This document shows positions 452-62,200 of a stretch of 64,000 bases of DNA, piece by piece. Under the pieces are notes generated by a model. It did not search any database and was not told the origin of the DNA. It saw only the letters and a list, made by a program, of their open reading frames with translations. Numbering within the stretch: the first letter of the stretch is position 1; every line of letters begins with the position of its first letter. The position numbers were made by a program, and so were the translations under genes. Source of the stretch: Mytilus edulis (Eukaryota); assembly GCF_963676685.1 (NCBI RefSeq), contig NC_092346.1, positions 44,702,001-44,766,000 on the forward strand, given 5' to 3'.

Positions 452-2995
452 TTATAAGTTGTTCCAATTTTATGCTGATTTTTAGGCAGTTAAGCTGCCT
501 TATGCGAGCACTCTGGATTTGGGTTCCCCCTGTGAATTTTTGAAAAAGTGCCTTGCTCTGATTTTGCGGGTCTGGTAGATTTTTTATAACTAATTAGACA
601 TTTTTGTCACACTTTTTGTGATGATAAACAATAAATATGTGGAAGGTTACCTTAAATGATCGTCAAATCACCCAAAACAATTGATGTTCCCCAATTGAAA
701 AAGTGCTAATTAAAAGTTAAACATAGCTTTTTATCGTCTGTGCTTTTGGTAAAGATGTAAGTGAACTATAGTAAGAATAATTTCATCGCCGAAAATGTCT
801 GTAATGAAGTCATTAAAATTTGCCAAATGGCGCATGGATATATTTTGCGGCTATTTTTAATCAGTGACGCCGTTGAATTTAGTGGATTCCATTCTATTAA
901 AGGTAAATATTTATAAGCCTTAACTTACTTACTCTCTGGAATAATTCTTGAATTTGTAAGAATACTTGATTATTTTATTTCTACATTGTATGAAGTTATG
1001 TATTTTATTAATTTAATCCGTAAATGCCAGCTGATGTTTTTATTATTTGGCATCGTGCCTCTGCGTACTTGCTATATATCGTGTAAACCCCATAACATTA
1101 TACTCGATCGGGGCCTTTGCAATTCCAATCGGGACCTCATTCAAGATGGTTTCTTTTTTCGTGTTATTTTAATAAAATTCAGGCTTTGGTGTTACAGACT
1201 GATACATGTGCTTTGATATAGCAAAAAAGTGCTTCAAACAGTTTTGAGGTTAATGACAGAATCAAAAAATATAGCATATATATATATATGAGGGTCTGAT
1301 GGGTTATTTTCGTTCTTCGTTATCGGCGCATATTCGCTATCTTGATCCTTTTTTTCTTTTTTCTTTTTTTTTATATTTCGTGATCCGTGATCATTTAATT
1401 TATTTCTCATTATCTCATTATCGTCTCCAAATCTCGATAGGGTAATTGCTTCACTTCCTGTGGTTTTTAACTCCAATTTCTCTGCTAAATGTCTTGTAAT
1501 AAATGACCTTGAGGCGCCTTCGTCAAAAAGGATCTTTGCATCAATCGTTTGGTCTTTGTAGCTTAGTGGTGCTATTGCGGTCTTTAATAAAACATTTGGA
1601 CGAGCACAATTTAAAGATGAATATAAAACAGAAGTCTCAGATTCCTCCGCGTTGTGTTTTTGTACTGTACTTGTACTACTTGTACTTGTAGTTTCTTTAT
1701 CATGATCGTTGTCGCATAGGCTTGTGTGGTGACGTCTATCACATTTCTTGCAGTTTGATTTAGATTTGCAATCTACTACGCGGTGTCGCCCTAAGCAATT
1801 AAAGCACAATCTATCTTCTTTAACAATTTTCATGCGGTCATTCTGGTCTGTATATTTAGTACATTCTGAGAAAAGTGGGGTTCCTTGCAGAATGCGCAGC
1901 TAATTTGATAAGATTTATGTGGTGAATTGGTTTTTGGCCAGTTCTCGCGAGATTTTGTGTTTGTGTAGAATGTAGCTGTAGTACTAGGACTTTCAAATGA
2001 TTCTGTACTGCTACCAGACTCTAAAATTGCCAGTTCCTTAAAAATAGATCTCCTAAGATCACCAAGATACCAATCTGTTGAACCGTGTTCACGAGTCAGG
2101 TTTTTGCGTATTTCACTGGGCATTTTGTTAAGTATGACTGGTACTAATAACGAGCCGTATGAGTCTTGAGTTTGTCCGAGAGATTCTAGTCCACGTATGT
2201 ATGTTTCTGTTCTGTCATAGTAACTTCTAAGTTGCGAAAGCGTATTCTTTGGTGCGGGTATGTCTAGTAGTGCATGTACGATTGAATTATCTTATGCTTT
2301 TGTCCGAATCTTTCATGTATGAGTTCAATAGCTTTGTTGTAGTTTGTGTGCGTAAGAGCAAATCCGGCAATTGTGTATGACGCTTCTCCCTCTAGTAACG
2401 ACTTTAGGTAATTAAACTTTTGAACGTCGGTTAGAGTGTTGTTGTTGTGAATTGCGGAATCAAAAGAATCCCAAAAGGATTGCCATTCAAGTACGTTTCC
2501 ATCAAATGTAGGTAAATTCAATTTCGGTAGTTTATGAAAGTTGCTGCTATTGACGCTTGAATTTGAACGTAAAGACGTGAAATTGAGGCCAGTATTTTGT
2601 GAGTCATCTCTTATGTTATATACGGGGCCAACATTGTGAATGGGTTGCAGTGTCTCATTGTGCGGCGAAAAACTTCTAGCGGCTGCATTTAAATTTGATG
2701 TTTGAGCTTGAATAAATTTACGAATTTTGCGTATTTTCGTCTCTAAATTAAATTTATACTCATCTGTGTCAAGTATCTCTTGCTCTATATCCTCCTCTTG
2801 TACACTATCTAAAATGTTCTTATCCAAATCCTTCAGAATATCTTGCTTTTCCTTTAATGTATCCAGAATAGTTTCCAGCTCGTCCTCTTCCGGTTTTTCT
2901 TCTGTTTCACTTCTCTCCTCAAATCTTCTTAAAATCCTAGAAACTGCGCTTCTGTGTCCCGCTCGTATAGATTTCAGCTTTGAAGTCATCTTCTT

Positions 2996-3010
2996 CTGGT
3001 CACGGTACCA
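2996..3010 (-). promoter_or_regulatory. Primer-binding site of the BEL element (tRNA-His-like)
   Basis: Minus strand TGGTACCGTGACCAG lies between the putative LTR and the gag ATG. It resembles the complement of a tRNA-His 3' end (TGGTGCCGTGAC...) with one mismatch. Confidence 0.65.
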
Positions 3011-3011
3011 A

Positions 3012-3178
3012 TATCGTAAAGTGGTTTTACTAAAACTGCATGTAATATAACAAAGACGTCTAAACTGAATGAATTTGTATTGATGACTGAAGTACAAGAT
3101 AACGTCATAAGTACACAACGTTGGATATACAATAATGCCGCGTTACGTTAAGTTCTCTTCTGTGCGTGATTTCCAACA
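3012..3178 (-). repeat. Putative 5' LTR of the BEL element
   Basis: Begins TGTTGG on the minus strand at 3178 and ends just before the PBS. Its outer edge coincides with where homology to paralog copy B (~35215) begins. Confidence 0.6.
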
Positions 3179-5742: not shown

Positions 5743-5786
5743 ACGCCAGACGCGCGTTTCGTCTACATAAGACTCATCAGTGACGC
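5743..5786 (-). ncRNA. Minimal type I hammerhead ribozyme, family 2 (intact core)
   Basis: Minus strand reads GCGUCA CUGAUGA GUCU uaugu AGAC GAAA CGCGCG UC^ UGGCGU. It has the canonical core, a 4-bp stem II, a palindromic stem III, a GUC cleavage triplet and a 6-bp stem I. Confidence 0.9.
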
Positions 5787-6855
5787 TCAGATCAAAATAG
5801 TTATAAAGCTAAAAATTAACCATGATATTCTGTATTCTGTATTCTTAAATATTTATTTATTTAAGATTTTTATTGAAATCGTGTTTTGTGGAAATGTCTT
5901 TATATAGACTATGTGACACCCAAAATTACATACACACATGTAGAAAAAATTTAAAACAACATTTTGTTTTTAACTTAATAAAATGGTAGCATACCTTATT
6001 TTTGCATTTGATTGGCATATACCCAACAACTCATTTAATTCATACAAATCTGTTGATTGCATTATAGACAAATCTGATTGACCAGCCATATCAAAGATGC
6101 CATAGCAATAAATTCAGTAAACCAAACATTGACACCATTGATTTTGAAACGCGGATGGAACCAGTAGCTGCTAACATAATTTATGTTTGTACAAATCAAA
6201 TGGAGAACATCGCACGAAACATCTTCGAAGAAATGATGTTCGACCATACCCATGAGTGGAACAAAAACCATTTAGCTATCTCAATGCCACCGATTACCAA
6301 ATGTCACACATCAGGAAGCCAAAATATGTGCCTACTGTTCAAAAAGGCGAATTCACTCCCTACGAATCCTGCAAGTCACATCCTTCAGAATTTTCTTACT
6401 ATACGCCAATTGATGCCGTTCCATACAACTGGGCAGCCAAAGCCCCAGACACATATTATGATTTAACAGAAGATGAATATTTTAGAGAAAATTTGTTTGT
6501 GCCAAAATTAGACCTTTCTTATATAAATGAAAATCCTCCTGTAATATCTGTCACAGACAGTTCCATGTTGTCGCTCAGCTCCTGTGAGTCAGAAGGAGCT
6601 TTCAAGAACTGGCTTAAAAGGAAAGACATGTATGAATCAGAAACTACAAGCAGTGTATCCTTGTCGATTTATAATGTTCCAAGAGGTAAGAATAGTTCCA
6701 ATGATAATGAAGGCGTTAAATGTAAAATGTTCTCGTGTGCCCTAAGACTTGCGTTATTCCAATTATTCCTTGTCTTATACTTTTTAATAGAATGAACAAT
6801 GATTTCGACATTCATCTTTTATATAAGCTTTAGATTTCAAATATTTTGGCTACGA

Positions 6856-6898
6856 GCATCACTGAAGAGACATGTATTGTCAAATGCGCATCTGGTGC
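6856..6898 (+). ncRNA. Hammerhead family 1, copy 1 (probably inactive)
   Basis: GCAUCA CUGAAGA GACA uguau UGUC -AAA UGCGCA UC UGGUGC. The conserved G of GAAA is deleted. Confidence 0.8.
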
Positions 6899-7220
6899 AG
6901 GAAAATTGTTACCGTTAATGTCATTATTACCACTGGGTCGATGCCTCTGCTGGTGGACTGTTAGTCCCCGAGGGTATAACCAGCCCAGTATCAGTACTGG
7001 CATGAAAATACGGATTTTTGTTTGTGTTATTAAAATTTGCTGTTATAAAATATTAGAAATTATTTTAAATTACGGAATGTTTCTCCCTCATGCAAAGCTA
7101 TGATTCCTTTCACGGATTTGGCTATACTTTTTGGACCTTTTAGATTATAGCGCTTCATCTTTTAAATAAGCTTTGGATTTCAAATATTTTGGCTACGAGC
7201 ATCACTGAAGAGACATGTAT

Positions 7221-7660
7221 ACCGGGCCACGTCTACTTGTATTTTTGTCCATCTGATGAGTTAAGCCTTTTTCAACTGATTTTTATAGTTCGTTCTTATG
7301 TTGTACTGTTATACCACTGTCCCAGGTTAGGGGGAGGGTTGGGATCCCGCTAACATGTTTAACCCCGCCACATTATTTATGTATGTGCCTGTCCCAAGTC
7401 AGGAGCCTGTAATTCAGTGGTTGTAGTTTGTTTATGTGTTACATATTTGTTTTTCGTTCATTTTTTTTTTACATAAATAAGGCCGTTAGTTTTCTCGTTT
7501 GAATTGTTTTACCTTGTCTTATCGGGGCCTTTTATAGCTGACTATGAGGTATGGGCCTTGCTCATTGTTGAAGGCCGTGACCTATATTTGTTAATGTCTG
7601 TGGCATTTTGGTCTTTTGTGGATAGTTGTCGCATTGGCAATCATACCACATCTTTTTTAT
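7221..7660 (+). repeat. Abundant interspersed repeat R1 (3' end ...GGCAATCATACCACATCTT), inserted into hammerhead copy 2
   Basis: Homologous copies at ~235-451 (+), ~21015-21480 (-), ~47337-47427 (+) and ~61545-61770 (+). It splits the motif GACATGTAT | ATTGTCGAAA. Confidence 0.85.
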
Positions 7661-7991
7661 ATTGTCGAAATGCACATCTGTTGCAGGAAAATTGGTACCG
7701 TTAATGTCATTACTACCACTGGGTCGATGCCTTTGTTGGTGGACTGTTAGTCCCCGAGGGTATCACTAGCCCAGTAGCCAGTACTTCGGTACTGGCATGA
7801 AAATACTATTTTTTTTCTGTTATTAAAATTTGCTGTTATAAAATATTAGAAATTATTGTAAATTAAGGAATGTATCTCCCTTATGCAAAGCTCTGATTCC
7901 TTTCACGGATTTGGCTATACTTTTTGGACCTTTTAGGTTATAGCGCTTCATCTTTTATATAAGCTTTGGATTTCAAATATTTTGGCTACGA

Positions 7992-8034
7992 GCATCACTG
8001 AAGAGACATGTATTGTCGAAATGCGCATCTGGTG
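7992..8034 (+). ncRNA. Minimal type I hammerhead ribozyme, family 1, copy 3 (intact core)
   Basis: CAUCA CUGAAGA (7998-8004) GACA uguau UGUC GAAA (8018-8021) UGCGCA UC^ UGGUG. Predicted cleavage after C8029 (AUC triplet). Confidence 0.9.
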
Positions 8035-11000
8035 AAGGAAAATTGGTACCGTTAATGTCATTAACAATTATTGTCTGTCGTTAATTGACACTCGACTCGA
8101 AAGACACTATATAACAGTTTCTTGTTTTGCATACAATTTTTTTAGCTATTTTAAAAAAGACAAACACTTTTCAGTACTGTAACTTATCTCAATCCGTTTT
8201 TGTCATTTATTTTTTTTCAAAATAAAGATCTCTGTTGACATGTTTTGTTCGTAAGTATAGCTTATTATTGAAAGATGATTTCAATGGGAAAAAAGTCTGT
8301 TGTCAAACGCAGAAATCTTGAAAGAGTAAATGAAAAAATGAAACCAGACTTCAAATTAGAAATGGCTGAGATTGTTACCGAACACGATATATATAAGCAA
8401 GAAGAAACGAAAAGAAGTGACGTATCAATGAGGTTTTGCTGAGGCGAACATCGACTTAACATCAGCAGAAGTGAACGATTTTACAAAACCGAGAGGTAAT
8501 TACATCTATATTTCTTTTTTCCCCAAGAGAATCCAAACTGATACTTGTCATAGTTACTTTTTTTTATTTAAAAAAAATTAATATATTTACCATTTGAAAG
8601 AAGAACAAAAAAAAATCACATACTTTCATGCGTTACATAACTTTACAATTTTAGAAATTCACTGTGAAAAAATATTGATTATTTTTTGCAGAGTCCAAAG
8701 ACATCCTTCAAGTTACTGAAACAAAAGATGAAGCATCAGAAGCAAGTATGACAGAACATCAAAGTCGTGATATTGGACCTATTGAAGAAACTGATAGAGA
8801 AAGACGAGTAATCAAAGCGGCTAAATGAGTTCTAGCCGTTGACACTTTCATGCAACGAAAAAAAGAACTGAAAGAAAGCGAGGAGTTATTCAGGATCGAA
8901 CACTTGAGATATTTTGACTTAGGATCAAGTCGTTCAAGTATGTCAGGCAGTATCAATATCAAACCCCCACCAATGATTACATCGGACACTTCTCAGGACA
9001 AAAGAGACAATTAAGGTACTAGCATTAGAGATAAGGAATGCTATGCAGAACAGCTAAAATTATCAGATACCATAGAAGACAATAAACAAATGAAAGAAAT
9101 AGTTGACAAGAAAAGTAACATCTTATCTAACAGTGATTGTGTCAGTATAGATTCTACGGATATACATAGAATCTATATTGGGGAGTGATTTTGGTAAAGG
9201 CGAGGGAGATGCCGTCAATGCTAAAATGTTTGAAACTGTGTCTTTAAATGAAGCACCAAAACCTGTCGAACCAGTGGAAAGACCTGTATTTGGAAAACTA
9301 CCTTTGCACCCCAATGTCTATCTAAGAAGGCAAGCTATTCTCAGAGAAAAGGCTAAACAAAAAGATATTGAGGATAGTGAAAACAAAGAATCGATTAAAT
9401 GCACCTATAATGTAACTTCAAATAGAAAAGGAAGATGCGATGATGAATACAGTGATGATAAAAAAGATAGCTCCACTTCAGAAACAGATTTTTCTGATAA
9501 TTATTCATATGAATCGGATTTCAATGAAGAAAGCCACGAGAGTGACAGTTTCTGTAGTAAAAATCCAGATGGAAACAATGAATTGCCATTAGAAATTAAC
9601 GATATCATAAAGGAAAGTAACAGACAGCAAGGGTTAATAAAGCATGAAGAATCAGAAAAAAACGTAAAAGGTTGGTTTACAAATTACATATACGTTTTTA
9701 AATCTTTGGGAGGGTTGTTGTTTTTTTTACACATTCCCTGTTTCCATTTTTCCATTTTACAATATTTACAAAGCAGTTATTGAACCAATGATAACTAATA
9801 TGATACTGTACTGTAGCACTTAAAAGAGAACGACAGTTTGAAAATGATAACTTGTCGAAATTAAAAAGGGAATATAAATCTGAAATGTAACTTCAAATTC
9901 AAACGAACTATGTGTTTAAATTATTGGATATTTTGAAATCGCATCTTTTACATACATTTTAAAGTCGCATTATTTCTCGTTATCGATGCTCCAATCGTTA
10001 TCGTTAATGTCCAACATAAAAAAATCTGGTAACATCTCATTGCATAAATGCATGAAAAAATTTCTTAAGATAAATATTTGACTAAAAAGTACAATCACAA
10101 ACACACTGAACTCAGAAGAAAATTCATAACGAAATATCCCTTATCAAAATGGCAAAATCAAATGAATAAAAGTGTCATATTTAAAAAAAAATGTATTTGA
10201 TTTGATGTTTCAGGAGGCCAACAAAGTTTGCAGGATATATGCACAAAGAATGATTTGTCAACTGCCAAAGATTTTGCCCCAGAGAAGGAATATTCTGAAA
10301 ATTTATCTGCATCCCTGATAATTGAAACCAAAAACAATACCAATGAATATGATATAAAAGAATTAAACATACTAATGCCAATGGAACAGAACGAAAAGGA
10401 ATCATCTACAGAATCGCTGATCAATATTGGTGGTGAAGGAAATAGTGGGTTATTTGACAGGAAAGAAAATTCGTTCAAAATCACTAAATGCATTAACGAC
10501 AACGAAAATCATTCAGAGTTTACCGAACCGAGCGCAACCAACCTGATTAACATGGTAGCCAGTGAAAACAACATATCCAAATTAACGAAAAGTCACAGCA
10601 ATACTCAAAGTGTTGACCAAAAAGTGGCATTAAACGAGAATGTATCAAACCTACTAATAACAACTAAAAGTCATAGTGACACTGGAACCAGTGGGATGTC
10701 TGTAAGGCAAAGACGGATTGGACATAACAATCTTTTGAGAAAATATGAAGGTATGTACTTTCTGAAATACGATTTTGTCAACTTTCAACATAATTTAAAG
10801 ATTTTAATCAATATATATGATTTTAACGAACTTAAATAACAATAAACAATACAAAACAAAAGATCGTGTTAACACTTACAGCTAATCAAAACTTCGTCAA
10901 TATTCTGTCAAGAAGGTTTACATCTTATGAAATATACTCATATTAGTCAATTTATACGATTCCAAAATCAAATCTTCTTTATAGAGATTGTTTAATTTAC

Positions 11001-12269: not shown

Positions 12270-12480
12270 CTTTTCTACCTCAGGCATAGATTACCTTAGC
12301 TGTATTTGGCAACACTTTTAGGAATTTTGGATCTCAATGCTCTTAAACTTCGTACTTTATATGGCTCTTTTTTTTTTTTTTTTTTTGGGATTCGAGCGTC
12401 ACTGATGAGTCTTTTGTAGAAAAAACGCGCGTCTGGCGTATATATAAAATTTAGTCCTGGTATCTATGATGAGTTTATTT
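12270..12480 (+). repeat. Family 2 hammerhead-bearing repeat with mutated core
   Basis: GCGTCA CTGATGA GTCT tttgt AGAA AAAA CGCGCG TC TGGCGT at 12396-12439, with CG of AGAC-GAAA changed to AA. The upstream flank is homologous to 20700-20809 (minus). Confidence 0.8.
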
Positions 12481-13690
12481 TCAATCTTCACACGAAGTTT
12501 CTATATCACGGAGAAACTTCCGTGAAGATATGAATAGAAAGATGAACGAATAGTTTAGTATAGATTCATACGAAAGTTCCGACTCAGGTTAACTTATTGT
12601 ATTTTAATGTTATACATGTACAAGGAAACAAGTTTTTGTATTTTTTTTAAGGTTAATGTTCATATTTTTTTCCCAAAGTGTTATCCATCCTAACGATCAT
12701 TTTAGCATTGGTTCGTTAAAAAAATTCGGATAATTTATTTTGTTTCAATGATATGCCAGAAAACAAGTATATGCATTTAGTTTTTAGCGTTATGTACATA
12801 TCGATATATAAAACAAATGTCGAATTTATTTTTAATTATTTTTTGTCTATATTGTTTGGGTTTTTTTTATGTAATAAAAAGTTGCTATAAACTTTACTTC
12901 CAAAGTGTTATCCATACTTAAACTAATGAAAGATCATAAAGGTATTTACTCAACGAAATGAATTATTCAAATGTGCATTTAAATTAGTGTTGTCAAATCG
13001 TACACTTTTGCCTAACCAGTTACTCGTATAATCGTTCGACCGATTAACCGGTTAACCGGTAGTTTAATTTAATGTTTGAAGGCCTTATCAATAGTACCCT
13101 ACACATCGATATAAGAAGATGTGGTATGAGTGTCAATCTGACTACATTCCATCCAGGTCATACATTTACGTTTTATAATACGTTGATTTGAAGTTTGGCC
13201 TTTGGTTTTATAAGGCTTGTCTGTGAAGATTCCTGTCGAAGTTTGAATTTTAATAATCAAATTCACGGTATCAACTATGGCGTTTGTACTTACTTCAAAT
13301 TGAAAACTAAAAAACCCAAACGTCTTGATCTCGTAGAATTGAATATGTCTAAAACCGATGATTCTTCCATTTTGTCTTGTTGTCTCCGAAAATAATGTGA
13401 GGTGTTTCAATTAAAATTGATTAATCCTGATATTCGTATCATCAAGTATACATTGATTACATTCACGTTGATTTGCTTTTTTACAGTTTTTGAGTTAGCA
13501 TTTAGTTTAAAGTATGACAAAGACTTGCACGACGGAGATTGCACATTCTACATAATATAAGATCAAAAATGAAATAATGAAGTAAATCGTAAAATTTAAT
13601 CGTATTACTGATTAAAAATTACTGTTAAAAAAACATAAAACTAATTATGTTTCCTTAAGATCTTGCCCCGAGCTGAGAGACAAGTTCTAA

Positions 13691-20656: not shown

Positions 20657-20700
20657 ACGCCAGACGCGCGTTTCGTCTACATAAGACTCATCAGTGACGC
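20657..20700 (-). ncRNA. Minimal type I hammerhead ribozyme, family 2 (intact core)
   Basis: The 44-nt motif is identical to 5743-5786 and lies within a repeat spanning ~20624-20809. Confidence 0.9.
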
Positions 20701-21014
20701 TCATTTCAAAATATTTATTAAGCCAAACAAGTACAAAGTTGAAGAGCATTGAGGATCCAAAATTCCAAAAAATTGTGCCAAATACGGCTAAGATAATCTA
20801 TGCCTGGGACATTTTAGGACAAAAATGATGGGTTGAACCTGATTTTATGGCAAGCAAAATCTCCCGCTTATATTGCATTCCCTGTCTGCATATAGAGTTT
20901 ATATAACTGCCTTATAAGATCTTATATAATGATAAAGGTTATTTTTTCATTCATATTATATTCTTTATTGTAGGATTATCCCAGAAAGAAATCACACATT
21001 GAAAGATGGTTGAA

Positions 21015-21480
21015 TATATAAAAAAGAAGATGTGGTATGATTGCCAATGAGACAACTCTCCACAAGAGACCAAAATGACACAGAAATTAACAACTAGAGG
21101 TCAGCGTACAGCCTTCAACAATGAGTAAAGCCCATACCACATAGTCAGCTATAAAAGGCCCCTAACTGACAATGTAAAACTAACGACCTAATTTATGTAC
21201 AAAAAAATGATCGAAAAACAAATATGTAACACATAAGAAAAAAACAACCACTGAATTACAGGCTCCAGACTTGAGACAGGCACAAACATACAAAGTGTGG
21301 CGGGGTTAAACATATGAGCGAGATCCCAACCCTCCCCCTAACCTGGGACAGTGGTATAACAGTAAAACATGATAAGAACAAACTATAAAACTCAGTTGAA
21401 AAAGGCTTAACTCATCAGATGGACAACAATACTAGTGGACGTGGCTGGGTACTTGTACATCCCAACAACAAAAAGACTGT
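21015..21480 (-). repeat. Repeat R1, long copy
   Basis: Reverse complement of 7221-7660. Confidence 0.85.
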
Positions 21481-41100: not shown

Positions 41101-44100
41101 TGGGCAGCCAATGCCCCAGACCCATATTCTGATTTGGCAGACGATGAGTATTTTAGAGAAAATCTGTTTGTGCCCAAATTAGACCTTTCTTATATGAATG
41201 AAAATCCTCCTGTAATTTCTGACACAGACAGTTCTATGTTGTCGCTCAGCTCCTGTGAGTCAGAAGGAGCTTTCAAGAACTGGCTTAAAAGGAACGACAT
41301 GTATGAATCAGAAGATACAAGCAGTGTATCCTTGTCGATTTATAACGTTCCAAGCGGTAAGAATAGTTCCAGTGATAATGAAGGCGTTAAAATGTAAAAT
41401 ATTCTCGTGTGCCCTACGGCTTACGTTATTCCAATTATTCCTGGGTTTATATTTTAAATTGAATGAATAATGATTTCTTTTTCGACATTCATTTTCTGTC
41501 TTTATTTGATACTAGTATTCCAAAATATTATGTAACAGTTTCTTGTTTGGCATACATTTTTTCTTTCTTGATTAGGCATTAATAAAGACAAACACTTTTC
41601 AGTAGCTATTCTCGATCAGTTTTTTTCAATTATTTTCGTAAGTATAGCTTATTATATTTTTTTTTATAGAAGATAATTTCAATGAAAAAGAACAGGCTGT
41701 TGTCAAACGCAGAATTCTTGAAAGAGTAAATGAAAAAATTAAACCAGGCTACGAATCAGAAATAGCTGAGATTTTTACCGAACATGATAGATATAAGCAA
41801 GAAGAAACAAGAAGAAGTGACGTATCCATGGGTTTTGTTCAGGCGAACATCGACGTAACATCAGCAGAAGTGAATGATTTTACAAAACCGAAAGGTAATT
41901 ATATATATATCGATATTTAACAAAAGTGATGCTTGTCCCTTTTTCTCCATGTAAATACAAAATGATACATGTCATAGTTACTTTTTTAAAGTTTAAAAAA
42001 AAATATATATATATTTACCATTTGAAAGAAGAACAAAAAGAAAAAAAAATCACTTTCAAGCATTACATAACTTTATAATTTTTAGAATTTTTTTTGCAGA
42101 GTCCCAAGATATCCTTCAAGCTACTGAAACAAAAGATGAAGCTTCAGAAGGAAGTATGACAGAGCATCAAAGTCGTGATATAGAATTTATAGATGAATCT
42201 GATAGAGAAAGAAGAGTAATCAAAGCGGCTAAATGGGTTCTGGCCGTTGACACTTTCATGCAACGAAAAAAAGAACTAAAAGAAAGCGAGAGATTATTCA
42301 GGATCGAACACTTGAGATATTTTGACTTAGAATCAAGTCGTTCAAGTATGTCAGGCTGTTCAAATTTTGAACAACAGTCAATGTTTAAATCGGACATTTC
42401 CCAGGACAAAAGAGATAGTTTAGGTACTAGAATGGGAGATAAGGAATTCTATGAAGAGCAGCTAAAATCGGACACTTCTCAGGACAAAAAAGACAATTTA
42501 GGTACTAGCATAAGAGATAAGAGATGCAATGAAGAGCAGATAAAATTATCAGATACCATAGAAGACAATAAACAAATGAAAGAAATAGTTGACCAGAAAA
42601 GTAACATCTTGTCTAACAGTGATTGTGTCAGTTTAGATTCTATGGATATAGACATAGCATCTATCTTGGGGAGTGATTTTGGTAAAGGCGAGGGAGATAC
42701 CGTCAATGCTAAAATTTTAGAATCTGTGTCTTTAAATGAAGCACCAAAACCTGTCGAACCAGTGGAAAGACCTTTATTTAGAAAACCACCTTTGCCACCC
42801 AATGCATATTTGAGAATACAAGCTATTCTCAGAGAAAAGGCTAAACAAAAAGATATTGAGGATAGTGAAAACGAAGAATCGACTGAAAGCACCAATAATG
42901 TAACTTTAAATAGAAAAAGAAGATGCAATGATGAATACAGTGATGATGAAACAGATAGCTTCACTTCAGAAACAGATTGTTCTGATAATTATCTTTATGA
43001 ATCAGATTTCAGTGAAGAAACTCATGAGAGTGACAGTTTCTGTAGTGGTGATGAACCAGATAATGGAAACAACGAAATGAATGATATCATAAAGGACAGT
43101 AACATAAAGCAAGGGTTAATAACACATGAAAACGCAAAAGGTTGGTTTACATATTACATATGGTTTGGGCTCTTTGGTTGGGTAGTTGTTTGTTTAACCC
43201 ATTCCCCAAAACTCAATCCCAGCCTTTCCTCTGTGATTTGGATCCTTGTGGTACAATTTCAGAAAGATCCATACAATAACGCCAGATTCCATTAACTGTT
43301 GGAACCCCGAAAATATATCCCAACCTTCCTTTTGTGATTTCAAACCTTGTATTTAAATTTCATACAGATCCATTCACTTAAACTAAAATTATTGTCCAGA
43401 AACCAAGTGTCTTCGACAAGGCGGACGACGACGACCAATACCGGTATACGACCCGAAATATTTTTGCTTGCAGTTGCATAACAAGACACAATATAGAAAC
43501 TAAAGCTTAGCAACAAAATTCACATCAAAACTGGGGGTTATCTCAGGTGCTCCGGAAGGGTGACAGGATCTGCTCCACATGCGGCATCTACCGTTAAAAT
43601 GAAATTATATTGTTCTTGGTACGGTAATTATTGAGATAATGTCTCACAAAAAAATTTAAACGCATCTCATTGCATTAATGCATGAAACAATTTCTGAAGA
43701 AAAAGTTTAACTAAAAGTGTCATTTTTAAAACAAATTTATTTCATTTGTTGTTTCAGGAAGCAAACAATGTTTTCAGGATATATACACACAGAAAGATTT
43801 TTCAACTGCCAAAGGTGATCTTTTCCCGGAGAATGAATATTCAGAAAAATTATCTGCATCCGTGAAAATTGAAACTAAAAACAATGCAAATAAGCATGAT
43901 ATAAAAGAATCAAACATACGAATGCCAATAGAACAGAATAAAAAGGCTTCCACTACAGAATCTCAATTTATTAGCAACATTGGTGGTGATGGAAACACTG
44001 GGTTGTATGTCAGGAAAGAAAATTCGTTCAAACTGACTAAATACAAGAACGACAACGAACGTTGTAGAGGGTTTGCCGAACCGAGCGCAACCAACCTGGA

Positions 44101-59264: not shown

Positions 59265-62200
59265 TCGTTGCGTGGGGTATAATTAAGTGTTATCATTTTG
59301 AAAATACATTAGCCTAAAAAATATCATCTTATTCTTTATGAAATAACCTAGTTATGAGTCAAAGAATCAGATTTAGAACAAGGAGATTATTTCACAACAA
59401 ATAATTTCAATTCAATGACTTTTTTTTAAAACTGTTTACTAATGCAAATCAACCACATCTTACTAAATTTAATTTTGTACAATGGGGACTGATTGATCTT
59501 TATCATGTCTCCTTCCAATAAGTCATCTTTTTAATGGAAAACATTTTCTTTTTTTGCACAGTAATGATTTTCCTATTAAGGTGGTGCCTAACACTACAGG
59601 GAGATAACTCTGTAAAGTCAGCTAAACGTTTAAATTACGTTGTGTTGTAAAAGGAATATTAAGCTTCTCAATGATCAAAATTGTTGTTTGTCAAAGTGCT
59701 GTATAACAAGTGTAATTTTGCTAACATAACGGTTGGTTCAAAATTTTTGAAATTTTTATATTTTTGTTAAAGGGTCAAAGTAAATACTTTGACAAAATTT
59801 TATGAAAATTAAACGAGCCAAATTAATTTTAGTGAAAGTGTTGGGTACCACCTTAAATCTAAATAAATTGTAAAATTAATTTTTTGGAGAAAAAATTGCT
59901 ATAATCCTTTTTTATGTTGAATTTTCAAAATTTATAGGTTATTAAAGGTTATAAAAATGAGGGTTAGTTTCTTGGCTATAAGCCTCATTATATCAATGGT
60001 TATAGCCCTGAAATAAATGTAGCTGAGATAAAACCTAGAGTTTGAAAGACCAAAGATCATAGAAAGTAGCCACATTTGTAATTCTTTTTTAAATACAGAT
60101 TTTATAATCAATGACAGAACAAAACTTAAATTCTAGCTATTAGAATATAGAAAAGAAGTAAAATAGTCCCTTGTGCTATAGCAGTTGTATGAAGACGAAC
60201 AATATACCCACTTAAGACACATATCCAAGGACTTCAGTTTAGCACCTGCATCACTTATAGAAACTGCTTGCTTATACTTCAACATCTATTAATTGAAAAG
60301 AAATTACTATTGTTCACATATTTCAATAAAATAAAAAAACAACATATCAATATTTTTCCTCATTTATAAACTAGAACTTATATATTAATATTGTGATGGA
60401 TTGAAATTAAGTCAACAAGTTGCTTTATGTTTTTAGCAGTTCTACAATCACTGAAAGATTATCTCTTTTAAATATTAAAACTATCATGAATTATAGTGTT
60501 CAGATTTTCAGAATGTTACACCTATACTGTATATGCCATTGAAACAAATCTCTATCTTTTAAGGTCAACTTATTTTTTAACACTAAAGGAATATTTTTTT
60601 TTAATAACACTTCCATTTATAATATCTTAACTCTTTAAAACAAATTACTGATGGCTATTGCTTAGTCCTAAAGAAAAGGTGTTCATGATATAGTTTTCTA
60701 GTTAATTTGGCAAATAATAGTGACACAAGATCTTATTTTCTTAAAAAATTGTTGCAAAACAGTACTCATTGACCAATATACAGTTGGGTGTCATATGGGA
60801 ATTCATTGAAAAATTCTCCAAAAATTAAATTATCTAATCATAGGTAAATTATTTTTTTCATCCTAAACATTTAATTTATGACTGGAAATTCAAGAATTTA
60901 AATCCCAATCCTCCAACAAACATTTTTTGACCTTCTTGATTGATTGTTAACTATAAACACTTGATAAACAAGAGTTAAAAATATAATATATCATACATAC
61001 TGCTGCTTCTTCATTTCTCCCTAACATTCTGAAAAAAAAATATTTATATATCTTCCTGAATTGACTCTTAAATTATAATTTGTGGGATACCAATTATTGT
61101 TGCTTTTGTGTGTAAAGGTCAACCATTAAATTTAAAATGTTAGACTAAGTACAAATTTTCTATTGCTTTGTATGGAGAATTTGTCAAAATCTCAATATCA
61201 ATTTATCCCCAAAAATACAAAATACCTTGCTGTCTATTAGACTGAAACAATCTCAGATTCTGCCCTTGTGTTTATAATAGTTGTTTAATGAATATACAAT
61301 TATACTTACCCTAGTAGATCCTCTAATTCTTTCAGGTCAAAATGAGCTTTCATATAACTGATCAAATGATTAGCTGCTACAGGCCTTCTCTGTAACTCTA
61401 GATTAAATATGGAGGGTTTGATTGTTTTCTTTATGAAAAGGATGATCTGAAATGAAAAAATTATTATAGGTTAAAATATTTTATTTTTCTATATTTTGGA
61501 GGACAGATAATAAAAGCTTATTTTAATGCTGTGTTTCATATTTTGTTTTCGTTCATTTTTTTGGGTCTATCTATTAGGCCGTTAGTTTTCTTGTTTGAAT
61601 TGTTTTTCATTTGTGATTTCTGGGCCTTTTATAGCTGACAGTGCTGTATGGGCTTTCATCATTGTTGAATCAGGCTGTACAGATACATATATAGCTGTTA
61701 ATTTCTGTGTCTTTTGTGATATTGTGGAGAGTTGTCTCATTGGCAATCATACCACATCTTTGTTTTTATATTATCATGATGCTAGATACCATTTCATACC
61801 ACTTTAACCACCAAACCAATCCAAGTGGCATACAATTCAATTGAAAGCTAAAATTATTCCAACAAATAACAACTATCCACTTATATGTTATAGGTCATGA
61901 AATGAATAATGTTTGACCTGATTTTGAACACTTTCAATTCTACAGTTGTAGTAGTTAGTTTTATGTTTTTGCGGACTGTTAAATTGAGACATATGTTGGC
62001 ATTAGAAGTATTCCAAGGAATACACTTTTCTTAATTTTAATAAATGACATATTTTTGTTCAAATTAACAACTTTGAAACTAGCAGAAACCTCTGAAATAT
62101 TCAGCATAAGATCAGGAAAGGAATGACCTTAATTCTATTCCATAACAATTAACATTGTATGAGTTTTTTCTGGTAAAAATCGTTTATTTATTTAATTATT

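What the first reader, a model, noticed from the sequence alone, without database searches (positions are those of the whole stretch)
6813..8068. Tandem hammerhead-ribozyme array (retrozyme-like) inserted in an intron, with the empty site visible in the paralog
Seen: head-to-tail monomers of 343-351 nt, each marked by a minimal type I hammerhead (stem I GCAUCA/UGGUGC, CUGAAGA, stem II GACA/UGUC, GAAA, palindromic stem III AUGCGCAU, AUC site). The third copy (7992-8034) has an intact core. The same intron in copy B (~41483-41500) lacks the whole array, so it is a mobile insertion. Known: non-coding tandem repeats with minimal type I hammerheads (non-LTR retrozymes) occur in animals including mussels, yield small circular RNAs, and are thought to be mobilised by Penelope-like RTs. 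Inference: the multimer records reverse transcription around a circular ~350-nt RNA. It is sense to the host gene, so it could have cut the pre-mRNA. The class is known; this particular family may or may not be described.
Basis: partly seen in the sequence, partly recalled or inferred. Interest (0 to 1): 0.85.

Follow-up and report, generated by a model that had tools for sequence, protein, structure and literature searches.

The report
Mussel hammerhead retrozyme inserted in intron
A 1.25-kb block in a mussel gene's intron is a decayed 2.3-unit copy of a small non-coding "retrozyme" retroelement carrying hammerhead self-cleaving ribozymes, a class already described in mussels, and the gene's duplicate still shows the empty insertion site.

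Summary
Window 6811-8063 (+) is a head-to-tail array of a ~350-nt unit with three type I hammerhead (HHR) sites. Only the last one (7992-8035) has an intact core. HHR-1 has lost G12. HHR-2 is split by a nested 439-nt interspersed repeat. The paralogous intron has the empty site at 41487|41488.

The interpretation (a non-LTR retrozyme) is supported. The unit is homologous along its whole length (62-68%) to the published Mytilus retrozyme family of Cervera & de la Peña 2020. Its HHR stems differ from that family's by compensatory changes. The exact 32-nt HHR occurs 3,336 times in this 1.37-Gb genome, in roughly 2,000 arrays. RNA-seq shows the family is transcribed, but this locus and its host gene are nearly silent.

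- Arrays of the family share a fixed 3' end 33-34 nt past the cleavage site, while their 5' ends are scattered. This is the signature of 5'-truncated target-primed reverse transcription of an RNA in which the ribozyme site is uncut or re-ligated.
- Short target-site duplications (TSDs) straddle the junctions.
- The helix-III hexamer stays palindromic across families, which points to ribozymes acting as dimers.
- The insertion post-dates the gene duplication.

The class is known; this is a sister family. The scan has flagged such arrays many times in this genome. No Penelope-like partner was identified.

The parts
6811..8063 (+). The whole retrozyme insertion: 2.3 units (811 nt) plus the nested repeat. 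The 5' edge is ambiguous over 6811-6815 because TTCAT is also present at the empty site.
   Evidence: the fam350 consensus aligns at 6811-6892, 6893-7220, 7679-8029 and 8030-8063.
6856..6898 (+). HHR-1, defective. The G of GAAA (G12) is deleted between 6881 and 6882. The predicted cleavage site is after C6892.
   Evidence: sequence; 112 of 122 reads insert a G behind 6881. RF00163 scores 18.8 bits, E 0.02.
7199..7219 (+). HHR-2, 5' half: stem I 5' arm, CUGAAGA, the stem II 5' arm and part of loop 2.
7221..7659 (.). Nested 439-nt high-copy interspersed repeat inserted into loop 2 of HHR-2, flanked by TAT/TAT. It is not part of the retrozyme.
   Evidence: other copies in the window, e.g. 21016-21451 on the - strand; more than 5,000 candidate copies, full-length ones at 94-95% identity; a read joint 7218->7662.
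7660..7684 (+). HHR-2, 3' half. The hexamer is UGCACA (palindrome broken) and the stem I 3' arm is UGUUGC. The predicted cleavage site is after C7678.
7679..8029 (+). The one uninterrupted unit (U2, 351 nt, from cleavage site to cleavage site). It is 94.3% identical to the family consensus.
7992..8035 (+). HHR-3, intact catalytic core. The predicted cleavage site is after C8029. The outermost pair of stem I is G:A.
   Evidence: RF00163 matches end to end at 25.4 bits, E 1.3e-4, below the gathering score of 34.
8030..8063 (+). The canonical 34-nt 3' tail (...CCGUUAAUGUCAUUA). This is the family-wide 3' terminus and the inferred start site of cDNA synthesis.
   Evidence: 22 of 23 arrays end at +31 to +36, with the mode at 34..
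7713..7798 (+). Conserved structured block shared with the published Mg family, including the UUCG-capped hairpin CCAGUACUUCGGUACUGG. The U1 copy at 6927-7003 carries a deletion in the hairpin.
   Evidence: read depth peaks here and loose ends come from other families.
6808..6810 (+). Left copy of the 3-nt target-site duplication ACA.
8064..8066 (+). Right copy of the 3-nt target-site duplication ACA.
41483..41492 (+). Empty target site in the paralogous intron (CGACA|TTCAT).
6686..8274 (+). Host intron, from GT at 6686 to AG at 8273-8274. It is inferred from the ORF, the paralog alignment and the splice consensus, not from RNA.
   Evidence: RNA coverage was too low to show the splice joint.

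Best explanation
This is an old, partly decayed insertion of a non-autonomous, non-LTR retrozyme: a ~350-nt non-coding unit whose RNA carries a type I hammerhead ribozyme. It belongs to a sister family of the experimentally studied Mytilus retrozyme.

Proposed mechanism:
1. Genomic arrays are transcribed. This is shown for the family as a whole, not for this locus.
2. The hammerheads cut the multimeric transcript into units, most likely acting in pairs through an intermolecular 8-bp helix III. This step is inferred.
3. The units are ligated into circles. This has been published for the sister family and was not tested here.
4. A retroelement reverse transcriptase starts cDNA synthesis at a fixed site 33-34 nt downstream of the re-joined cleavage site (...UUUAUUA, just 5' of a conserved structured block). 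It runs round the template for a variable distance, so the DNA copies have a constant 3' end, a random 5' end and non-integer unit numbers. This is inferred from roughly 25 arrays read in detail and from genome-wide counts.

Here one such cDNA of 2.3 units, from a single template molecule, was inserted in sense orientation into an intron after the host gene had duplicated, giving a 3-nt ACA target duplication and TTCAT microhomology at the 5' junction. Since then each unit has accumulated about 2.7% substitutions. Two of the three ribozymes were disabled and a second mobile element landed inside HHR-2. The locus is now essentially an inert fossil.
For: Array anatomy and empty site.

Family size and spread:
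- 3,336 exact copies of the 32-nt HHR, against 0 for the control.
- 99 scored full-length matches at 87-95% identity on all large contigs.

Ends of the arrays:
- 22 of 23 arrays end at +31 to +36 after the cleavage site, while their 5' ends fall at consensus positions from 31 to 347.
- Genome-wide, the tail motif occurs 3,296 times but is followed by the next unit only 1,041 times, which gives about 2,000 array ends.
- Junction-straddling TSDs are enriched: mean 3.76 nt against a null of 3.16 (P = 0.007), and 7 of 25 arrays have 5 nt or more.

Single template and dating:
- U1 and U2 share 8 derived differences from the family consensus and carry 9-10 private ones each. This fits one template and about 2.7% decay since insertion.
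- The paralogous introns differ by 9-27%.

The ribozyme:
- Rfam RF00163 matches HHR-3 end to end, 25.4 bits, E 1.3e-4.
- 94% of cells are paired and 7 of 14 pairs show compensatory changes. 0 of 500 shuffles reach the observed covariation score, and the slid controls are far lower.
- The substitution rate is 1.2% in the 13 core nucleotides against 2.8% in the rest of the unit.

Dimer: all three hexamer pairs covary. The two-strand fold forms the 8-bp trans helix at -27.3 kcal/mol, against 2 x -7.8 for separate monomers.

Homology to the published family.

RNA:
- 100-500x depth over the units, mostly at 90-95% likeness, and zero on the flanks.
- No pile-up of read ends at any cleavage site (under a fifth of the local depth).
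- A strand bias consistent with HHR-sense RNA in two of the four runs.

Literature: self-cleavage and abundant circRNA were shown for Mytilus retrozymes (PMC7229834). Retrozymes are proposed to be non-autonomous derivatives of Penelope-like elements (bioRxiv 10.64898/2026.07.22.740005).
Against: - No experiment or read evidence here shows cleavage or circularity for this family. Reads that run across the cleavage site fit uncut multimers as well as circles.
- The HHR scores below Rfam's gathering threshold.
- In the predicted minimum-energy fold of the circular consensus, the stem I 3' arm is sequestered, so the ribozyme is not pre-formed. The fold's z-score is only -2.1.
- The sequences used for covariation come from only three families. 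They were selected with a pattern that required partial pairing in stems I and II; the hexamer was not pre-filtered.
- No Penelope-like element with a matching hammerhead or 3' tail was found.
- The arrays read in detail were chosen because they contain a full unit, so the length distribution is biased.
- TSDs are short and are missing in many arrays.
Confidence: 0.88

Rival explanations
1. Same element and same reverse transcription, but the template was a linear, uncleaved multimeric read-through transcript of a genomic array rather than a circular monomer.
For: DNA alone cannot tell the two apart. RNA reads run through the cleavage sites without excess ends, which uncut multimers would also produce. 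Long genomic arrays that could serve as sources exist, for example 13 or more consecutive units on C1 near 57.06 Mb. The predicted circle fold does not favour the active ribozyme.
Against: For the sister family, Northern blots showed that most of the RNA is monomer-sized circles (PMC7229834). A fixed initiation site inside the unit with no fixed 5' end is simply explained by an endless template. Units within this array share 8 derived changes. That is expected for laps round one circle, though a young source array would also give it.
Confidence: 0.25
2. An ordinary satellite or minisatellite that grew in place by unequal crossing-over or replication slippage. The hammerhead-like motif would be a passive passenger.
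For: It is a tandem repeat. Some loci hold long arrays. The 2026 preprint argues that local amplification contributes to retrozyme arrays.
Against: The paralog shows that the whole 2.3-unit block arrived at one point with a TSD. About 2,000 dispersed short arrays share one 3' terminus and have scattered 5' ends. The HHR stems covary and the core is about twofold less variable than the rest of the unit.
Confidence: 0.04
3. A DNA-level mobile element that carries internal tandem repeats, such as the Helitron/Helentron- or MITE-borne repeats known from bivalves.
For: Bivalve genomes do hold satellite-like repeats carried by Helentrons and MITEs (from general knowledge, not tested here). The flanks are AT-rich.
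Against: The inserted segment consists only of retrozyme units. Compared with the empty site there are no terminal inverted repeats, hairpin or extra non-unit sequence. Variable 5' truncation with a constant 3' end is a hallmark of reverse transcription.
Confidence: 0.03

Closest known systems
Mytilus galloprovincialis non-LTR retrozyme (construct Mg353; HHR A/B) of Cervera & de la Peña, NAR 2020 (PMC7229834)
   Same: - Same genus-type genome: the published 32-nt HHR occurs 3,596 times here.
- Same architecture: a 350-370-nt AT-rich tandem unit with one type I HHR that has a vestigial, palindromic helix III.
- Collinear homology over the whole unit at 62-68% identity.
- A near-identical ~65-nt block (ACCACUGGGUCGAUGCC...CCCAGUAG) and a conserved UUCG/UUCU-capped hairpin.
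   Different: - A different family. The HHR differs by CUGAUGA>CUGAAGA, one compensatory pair in stem I, two flipped pairs in stem II, C-G>U-A in helix III, and loop 2.
- The post-cleavage tail is 15 nt shorter.
- The published primer pairs would not amplify it: 8-13 mismatches for three of the four primers. The cloned circRNAs and cleavage kinetics in that paper therefore belong to the sister family.
- I could not tell whether this family was among the roughly 5,000 motifs counted in that paper.
Amphibian satellite 2 / axolotl retrozymes (HHR_Amex1), whose hammerheads act as dimers
   Same: [quoted passage not shown] Efficient cleavage there needs two ribozymes (PMC7229834). Here the hexamer stays palindromic through covariation, and a trans 8-bp helix is predicted.
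   Different: No sequence homology. In amphibians dimer dependence was shown by experiment, whereas here it is inferred. The 2020 papers describe invertebrate retrozyme HHRs as cleaving as monomers.
[quoted passage not shown]
   Same: Type I topology, a weak helix III, a tandem arrangement, and an HHR close to the element's 3' end followed by a short tail (PMC8557442). PLEs are the proposed source of the reverse transcriptase.
   Different: The unit has no ORF. The 30 best GIY-YIG loci of this genome carry no HHR. A 911-aa PLE with a C-terminal endonuclease lies next to arrays of the related 550-nt family, but it is on the opposite strand, has no sense-strand HHR in its 3' UTR and sits in (TA)n. 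Arrays of the 350-nt family are not in (TA)n.
SINE/LINE-type target-primed reverse transcription with 5' truncation
   Same: A constant 3' end, variable 5' ends, short target duplications and 5'-junction microhomology.
   Different: There is no poly(A) or simple-repeat tail. Copies can exceed one unit length, which a linear monomer template cannot give.

Membership tests
Hammerhead ribozyme, type I (Rfam RF00163) | Conserved catalytic core CUGANGA ... GAAA ... UH | tested here: met
   HHR-3 (7998-8029) has the complete core. HHR-1 lacks G12 and HHR-2 is split, so the feature is met in one of three copies. It is also met in the family consensus.
Hammerhead ribozyme, type I (Rfam RF00163) | Three helices round the core with stem I open, supported by covariation | tested here: met
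   94% of cells are paired, 7 of 14 pairs have changes on both sides, and 0 of 500 shuffles reach the covariation score. Caveats: only three families, and stems I and II were pre-filtered for partial pairing.
Hammerhead ribozyme, type I (Rfam RF00163) | Covariance-model score at or above Rfam's gathering threshold (34 bits) | tested here: not met
   25.4 bits, E 1.3e-4, full-length match 1-45/45. There was no hit when 1.5 kb or 64 kb was scanned. The experimentally validated sister type also falls just short, at 33 bits.
Hammerhead ribozyme, type I (Rfam RF00163) | Site-specific self-cleavage | not testable with these tools
   No excess of RNA ends at the predicted sites. That fits re-ligation or non-cleavage equally well.
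Non-LTR retrozyme (Cervera & de la Peña 2020) | Short (150-450 bp) tandem units, each with a type I HHR; non-coding; GC under 45-50%; no LTR, PBS or PPT | tested here: met
   A 350-nt unit with 38% GC and no ORF beyond a 90-codon stop-free stretch in a consensus trimer. The inserted segment holds units only.
Non-LTR retrozyme (Cervera & de la Peña 2020) | Dispersed multicopy insertions with target-site duplications | tested here: met
   for copy number and spread. for TSD enrichment (P = 0.007). for the empty site and the ACA duplication.
Non-LTR retrozyme (Cervera & de la Peña 2020) | Expressed as monomer-sized linear and circular RNA | tested here: inconclusive
   The family is transcribed at 100-500x in four RNA runs, and reads are continuous across the cleavage sites. 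Neither size nor circularity can be read from short reads laid on a tandem reference.
Non-LTR retrozyme (Cervera & de la Peña 2020) | Sequence homology to a described retrozyme | tested here: met
   Collinear alignment with the genomic family that matches the published Mg primers and HHR. The published Mg353 sequence was read.
Non-autonomous derivative of a Penelope-like element | A PLE in the same genome sharing the HHR or the 3' terminal sequence | tested here: inconclusive
   None was found among the 30 GIY-YIG loci or the three PLE-adjacent loci examined.

The most novel reading that the evidence does not exclude
Mussel retrozymes may carry a dedicated start site for reverse transcription. 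Three families with otherwise different sequence all end in UUUAU(U/A)(A). In the two homologous families this terminus lies 2-5 nt upstream of a conserved, structured ~85-nt domain and 34-49 nt downstream of the re-joined ribozyme site.

If so, the circle (or uncut multimer) would be recognised and primed at one defined position, much as a SINE borrows its LINE's 3' end, and the hammerheads would work only as pairs through a palindromic helix III kept by covariation. That would give the first concrete handle on how animal retrozymes are primed, and on which element supplies the enzyme.
Probability: 0.35. Interest if true: 0.55.

Novelty: new member of a known kind. Interest (0 to 1): 0.33.

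Why it matters
Taken alone, the locus is an ordinary fossil of a known class of retroelement in a genus where that class has already been studied. Its value is as a clean natural experiment. A filled and an empty site lie side by side in one window, showing that a multi-unit block arrived in a single event.

The family-wide pattern gives sequence-level support for the published but untested model that animal retrozymes spread by reverse transcription of a circular or uncut RNA. That pattern is a fixed 3' end 34 nt beyond the ribozyme cut site, scattered 5' ends and short target duplications. It also points to where priming occurs, which can be tested directly.

The locus also illustrates how sense-strand ribozymes inside a gene can be disarmed, here by a core deletion and a nested insertion.

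Tried and rejected
- **Rfam scans.** At gathering threshold on the whole window, and at E <= 10 on 1.5 kb, no hammerhead was reported. This was a filter effect: 111-nt scans gave full-length RF00163 matches. The weak twister-P1 hit at 7369-7404 (16.5 bits, E 3.7) lies in the nested repeat and is treated as chance.\n- **Tandem Repeats Finder.** It did not report the array.\n- **Host gene.** Its exons have no Pfam domain, and I did not pursue its identity.\n- **RNA for this locus.** The exons are covered 0-3x and the flanks 0x, so there is no splice joint and no evidence for or against cutting of the pre-mRNA.\n- **Read-end peaks at 6997/6998 and 7782/7791.** They sit at an indel in U1 and in the UUCG hairpin, not at cleavage sites. 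I read them as mapping or structure effects.\n- **Search for the autonomous partner.** The 30 best GIY-YIG loci have no hammerhead. Loose read ends led to a 550-nt tandem family that shares only the 30-nt ribozyme module. In three loci that family abuts a 911-aa Penelope-like element inside (TA)n, but on the opposite strand, and that element's 3' UTR has no sense-strand hammerhead. I therefore do not call it the partner of the 350-nt family. Further loci could not be fetched.\n- **First TSD test.** With loose placement it was not significant (P = 0.17). The junction-anchored test was.\n- **B-box-like GGGUCGAUGCC in the conserved block.** I considered it as a Pol III promoter and set it aside. 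There is no A box, there are T-runs inside the unit, and no read starts occur there.


Full report
**What is there**

Window 6811-8063 (+) is a head-to-tail array of a ~350-nt unit. Counted from one predicted ribozyme cut to the next, it consists of:
- an 82-nt partial unit, 6811-6892;
- a full unit, 6893-7678, interrupted by foreign DNA;
- a clean 351-nt unit, 7679-8029;
- a 34-nt tail, 8030-8063.

Only the third ribozyme (7992-8035) has a complete core.
- HHR-1 (6856-6898) has lost the G of GAAA. RNA reads from other copies re-insert that G in 112 of 122 cases.
- HHR-2 is split in loop 2 by a 439-nt element at 7221-7659, flanked by TAT on both sides. That element is a separate high-copy interspersed repeat, with more than 5,000 candidate copies and full-length ones at 94-95% identity. 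Other copies lie in the window.
- HHR-2 also has a substitution in the helix-III hexamer and one in stem I.

The 32-nt core is not a chance match. It occurs once in the window against 0.00 expected, and 3,336 times in the genome against none for the reversed control.

**The empty site**

The window holds two diverged copies of a gene, roughly 3.4-13 kb and 36.4-45.8 kb. The exon upstream of the array is an open frame on the + strand in both copies, followed by a GT donor. The array is therefore in sense orientation within an intron, inferred as 6686-8274.

In the paralog the flanks meet at 41487|41488 (CGACA|TTCAT). In the filled copy, ACA is present on both sides (6808-6810 and 8064-8066). 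The first five bases of the array, TTCAT, coincide with the target sequence, so the 5' junction shows microhomology.

**Which family it belongs to**

The genome is 1.37 Gb with 14 chromosome-sized contigs. The hammerhead of the published Mytilus galloprovincialis retrozyme construct Mg353 (read) occurs in it 3,596 times exactly.

I built a consensus for that genomic family ('famMg', 365 nt). It matches the published primers 109R, 110R and 110D with 0, 1 and 4 mismatches. The unit in the window ('fam350', 350 nt, 38% GC) aligns with famMg over its whole length at 62-68% identity. The two share a nearly identical ~65-nt block and a conserved hairpin capped by UUCG or UUCU, whose stem shows two compensatory pairs.

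The hammerheads differ by CUGAUGA>CUGAAGA and by compensatory changes in all three helices. Three of the four published primers have 8-13 mismatches to fam350, so the published clones and kinetics belong to the sister family. Whether fam350 was among the roughly 5,000 motifs counted in that paper cannot be decided from the text. The window also contains fragments of the Mg family at 5749-5813 (-), 12270-12484 (+) and 20663-20806 (-).

**Is the hammerhead real?**

- Rfam's type I model matches HHR-3 end to end at 25.4 bits (E 1.3e-4 for a 111-nt scan). That is below the gathering score of 34. HHR-1 scores 18.8 bits.
- The sister hammerhead at 20657-20700, which differs from the one cleaved in vitro (PMC7229834) by a single base in loop 2, scores 33 bits, also just under threshold. 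The larger scans missed all of these because of speed filters.
- I aligned 39 distinct variants from three families. 94% of cells form pairs, and 7 of 14 pairs show changes on both sides. No shuffle reached the covariation score, and the slid controls collapse.
- Two caveats apply. Three families amount to few independent events, and I had pre-filtered stems I and II for partial pairing. The hexamer was not filtered.
- Among 46 full units picked by BLAST without regard to the ribozyme, the 13 core nucleotides differ from the consensus at 1.2% of cells, against 2.8% for the rest of the unit.

**Dimer action**

Helix III can form only one or two pairs within one ribozyme. The hexamer between A15.1 and U16.1 is nevertheless a palindrome in each family: UGCGCA, CGCGCG, UCCGGA and UCUAGA. 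All three nested hexamer pairs covary. The two inner pairs cannot form in a hairpin, so their maintenance argues for pairing between two ribozymes.

In a sample of 100 genomic sites, the palindromic forms dominate, and most exceptions are single CpG transitions. Two-strand folding gives the 8-bp trans helix with swapped stem I at -27.3 kcal/mol, against -7.8 for each monomer alone.

In that geometry, one ribozyme's core cuts its partner's site. In this array the intact core of HHR-3 would then cut after C6892 or C7678, not after C8029. This is inference. The 2020 papers describe invertebrate retrozyme ribozymes as active as monomers.

**How the copies are made**

I mapped about 25 independent arrays of the family.
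- Their 3' ends fall at +31 to +36 after the cleavage site in 22 of 23 cases. The mode is 34 and the terminal sequence is ...CCGUUAAU(G/U)UUAUUA.
- Their 5' ends are scattered over the unit.
- Their lengths run from 1.15 to more than 6 units.

Genome-wide, the tail motif up to +33 occurs 3,296 times but is followed by the next unit only 1,041 times. Allowing for decay, that gives about 2,000 array ends.

Junction-anchored direct repeats are longer than in permuted pairs: mean 3.76 against 3.16 nt, P = 0.007. Seven of 25 arrays have 5 nt or more, often including the terminal UUA.

A constant 3' end with random 5' truncation is the signature of target-primed reverse transcription. The start lies beyond the ribozyme cut, and copies exceed one unit. 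The template must therefore have had that site uncut or re-ligated, meaning a circle or an uncleaved multimer.

The Mg family ends at a homologous point (+48/49...GAGUUUAUUU). The 550-nt family ends at +366-368 (...GUUUAUA). All three termini therefore read UUUAU(U/A)(A).

**History of this insertion**

The two full units share 8 differences from the family consensus and have 9-10 private ones each. They come from one template and have decayed by about 2.7% each since insertion. The flanking intron differs by 9-27% between the paralogs. The insertion is thus younger than the duplication, in line with the empty site. At 90-94% identity to the consensus, it is older than typical copies of the family, which average 97%.

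**RNA**

Four raw-read RNA runs carrying the species label of the best DNA holder were laid on 6300-8600 at 90% likeness.
- The units are covered 100-500x, mostly by reads 90-95% alike, so they come from other copies.
- The flanks have zero coverage and the host exons 0-3x. This locus is effectively silent in these samples.
- No splice joint or truncated host transcript could be assessed.
- No cleavage site shows a pile-up of read ends above a fifth of the local depth. Most molecules are therefore continuous across the site, as expected for circles or for uncut multimers.
- Two runs show a roughly 3:1 bias of first mates on the - strand, which in common stranded protocols means RNA of the ribozyme's polarity.
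- Loose read ends revealed a 550-nt tandem family (about 1,400 copies) that shares only the 30-nt ribozyme module with fam350. They also revealed further families that share the conserved block.

**Search for the partner**

This failed. The 30 best GIY-YIG loci have no hammerhead. A 911-aa Penelope-like element with a C-terminal endonuclease abuts 550-family arrays in three loci inside (TA)n. It lies on the opposite strand and has no sense-strand hammerhead in its 3' UTR. fam350 arrays are not in (TA)n.

**Comparison with what is known, and verdict**

Mytilus retrozymes, their self-cleavage and their abundant circular RNAs were published in 2020 (PMC7229834, PMC7761336). A 2026 preprint argues that animal retrozymes derive from Penelope-like elements and are depleted from introns in frogs (10.64898/2026.07.22.740005).

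The finding is a correct recognition of a known class. It is a sister family that has apparently not been characterised experimentally. The scan's own notes show many similar flags in this genome.

The points added here are the fixed +34 terminus with a shared end motif, the TSD enrichment, the palindrome covariation and the dating against the paralog. I did not find these stated in the papers I read, though I read only four. They are modest, testable refinements rather than a new kind of system.

Noticed in passing
window 7221-7659 (other copies at 21016-21451 on the - strand, 234-449 and 61530-61775): A discrete ~440-nt interspersed repeat with more than 5,000 candidate copies, 94-95% identity between full-length copies, TAT flanks here and an end reading ...CATCUUUUUUAUA. 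It is heavily represented in RNA-seq on both strands (200-900x). I did not determine its class (SINE or MITE).
   Followed up: partly
window 5749-5813 (-), 12270-12484 (+), 20663-20806 (-): Fragments of the published Mg-type retrozyme family. Two have intact hammerheads (5743-5786 and 20657-20700, both on the - strand; RF00163 scores 33 bits). A degenerate one lies at 12402-12433. The one at 12270-12484 ends at +51 after its cleavage site.
   Followed up: partly
L044 973-2667 and L080 2568-4286 (genome C1:25.85 Mb and C1:72.88 Mb): A third tandem family with a ~550-nt unit and about 1,400 copies. It shares only a 30-nt hammerhead module (96.7% identical) with the 350-nt family, which suggests module exchange. 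Its arrays end at +366-368.
   Followed up: partly
L079 6065-9593 plus L082 (genome C1:41.916-41.922 Mb): A classic Penelope-like arrangement: a 911-aa ORF with a C-terminal GIY-YIG domain, a 1,067-nt partial tandem copy and an inverted copy at 99.8-99.9% identity. Its 3' end lies in (TA)n. It abuts a 550-family fragment on the opposite strand, and the same composite recurs in L080 at 92% identity.
   Followed up: partly
window 7713-7798 and 6927-7003: A conserved ~85-nt block shared by the 350-nt and Mg families. It has a predicted branched fold, an 8-bp UUCG/UUCU hairpin with two compensatory pairs, and a B-box-like GGGUCGAUGCC. It sits immediately 3' of the families' common 3' terminus. RNA depth peaks here because several families share it.
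   Followed up: partly
window 1234-3118 (-): ORFs with DUF1759 and aspartyl-protease-like matches, which look like a remnant of an LTR or Pao-type retroelement upstream of the host gene.
   Followed up: no
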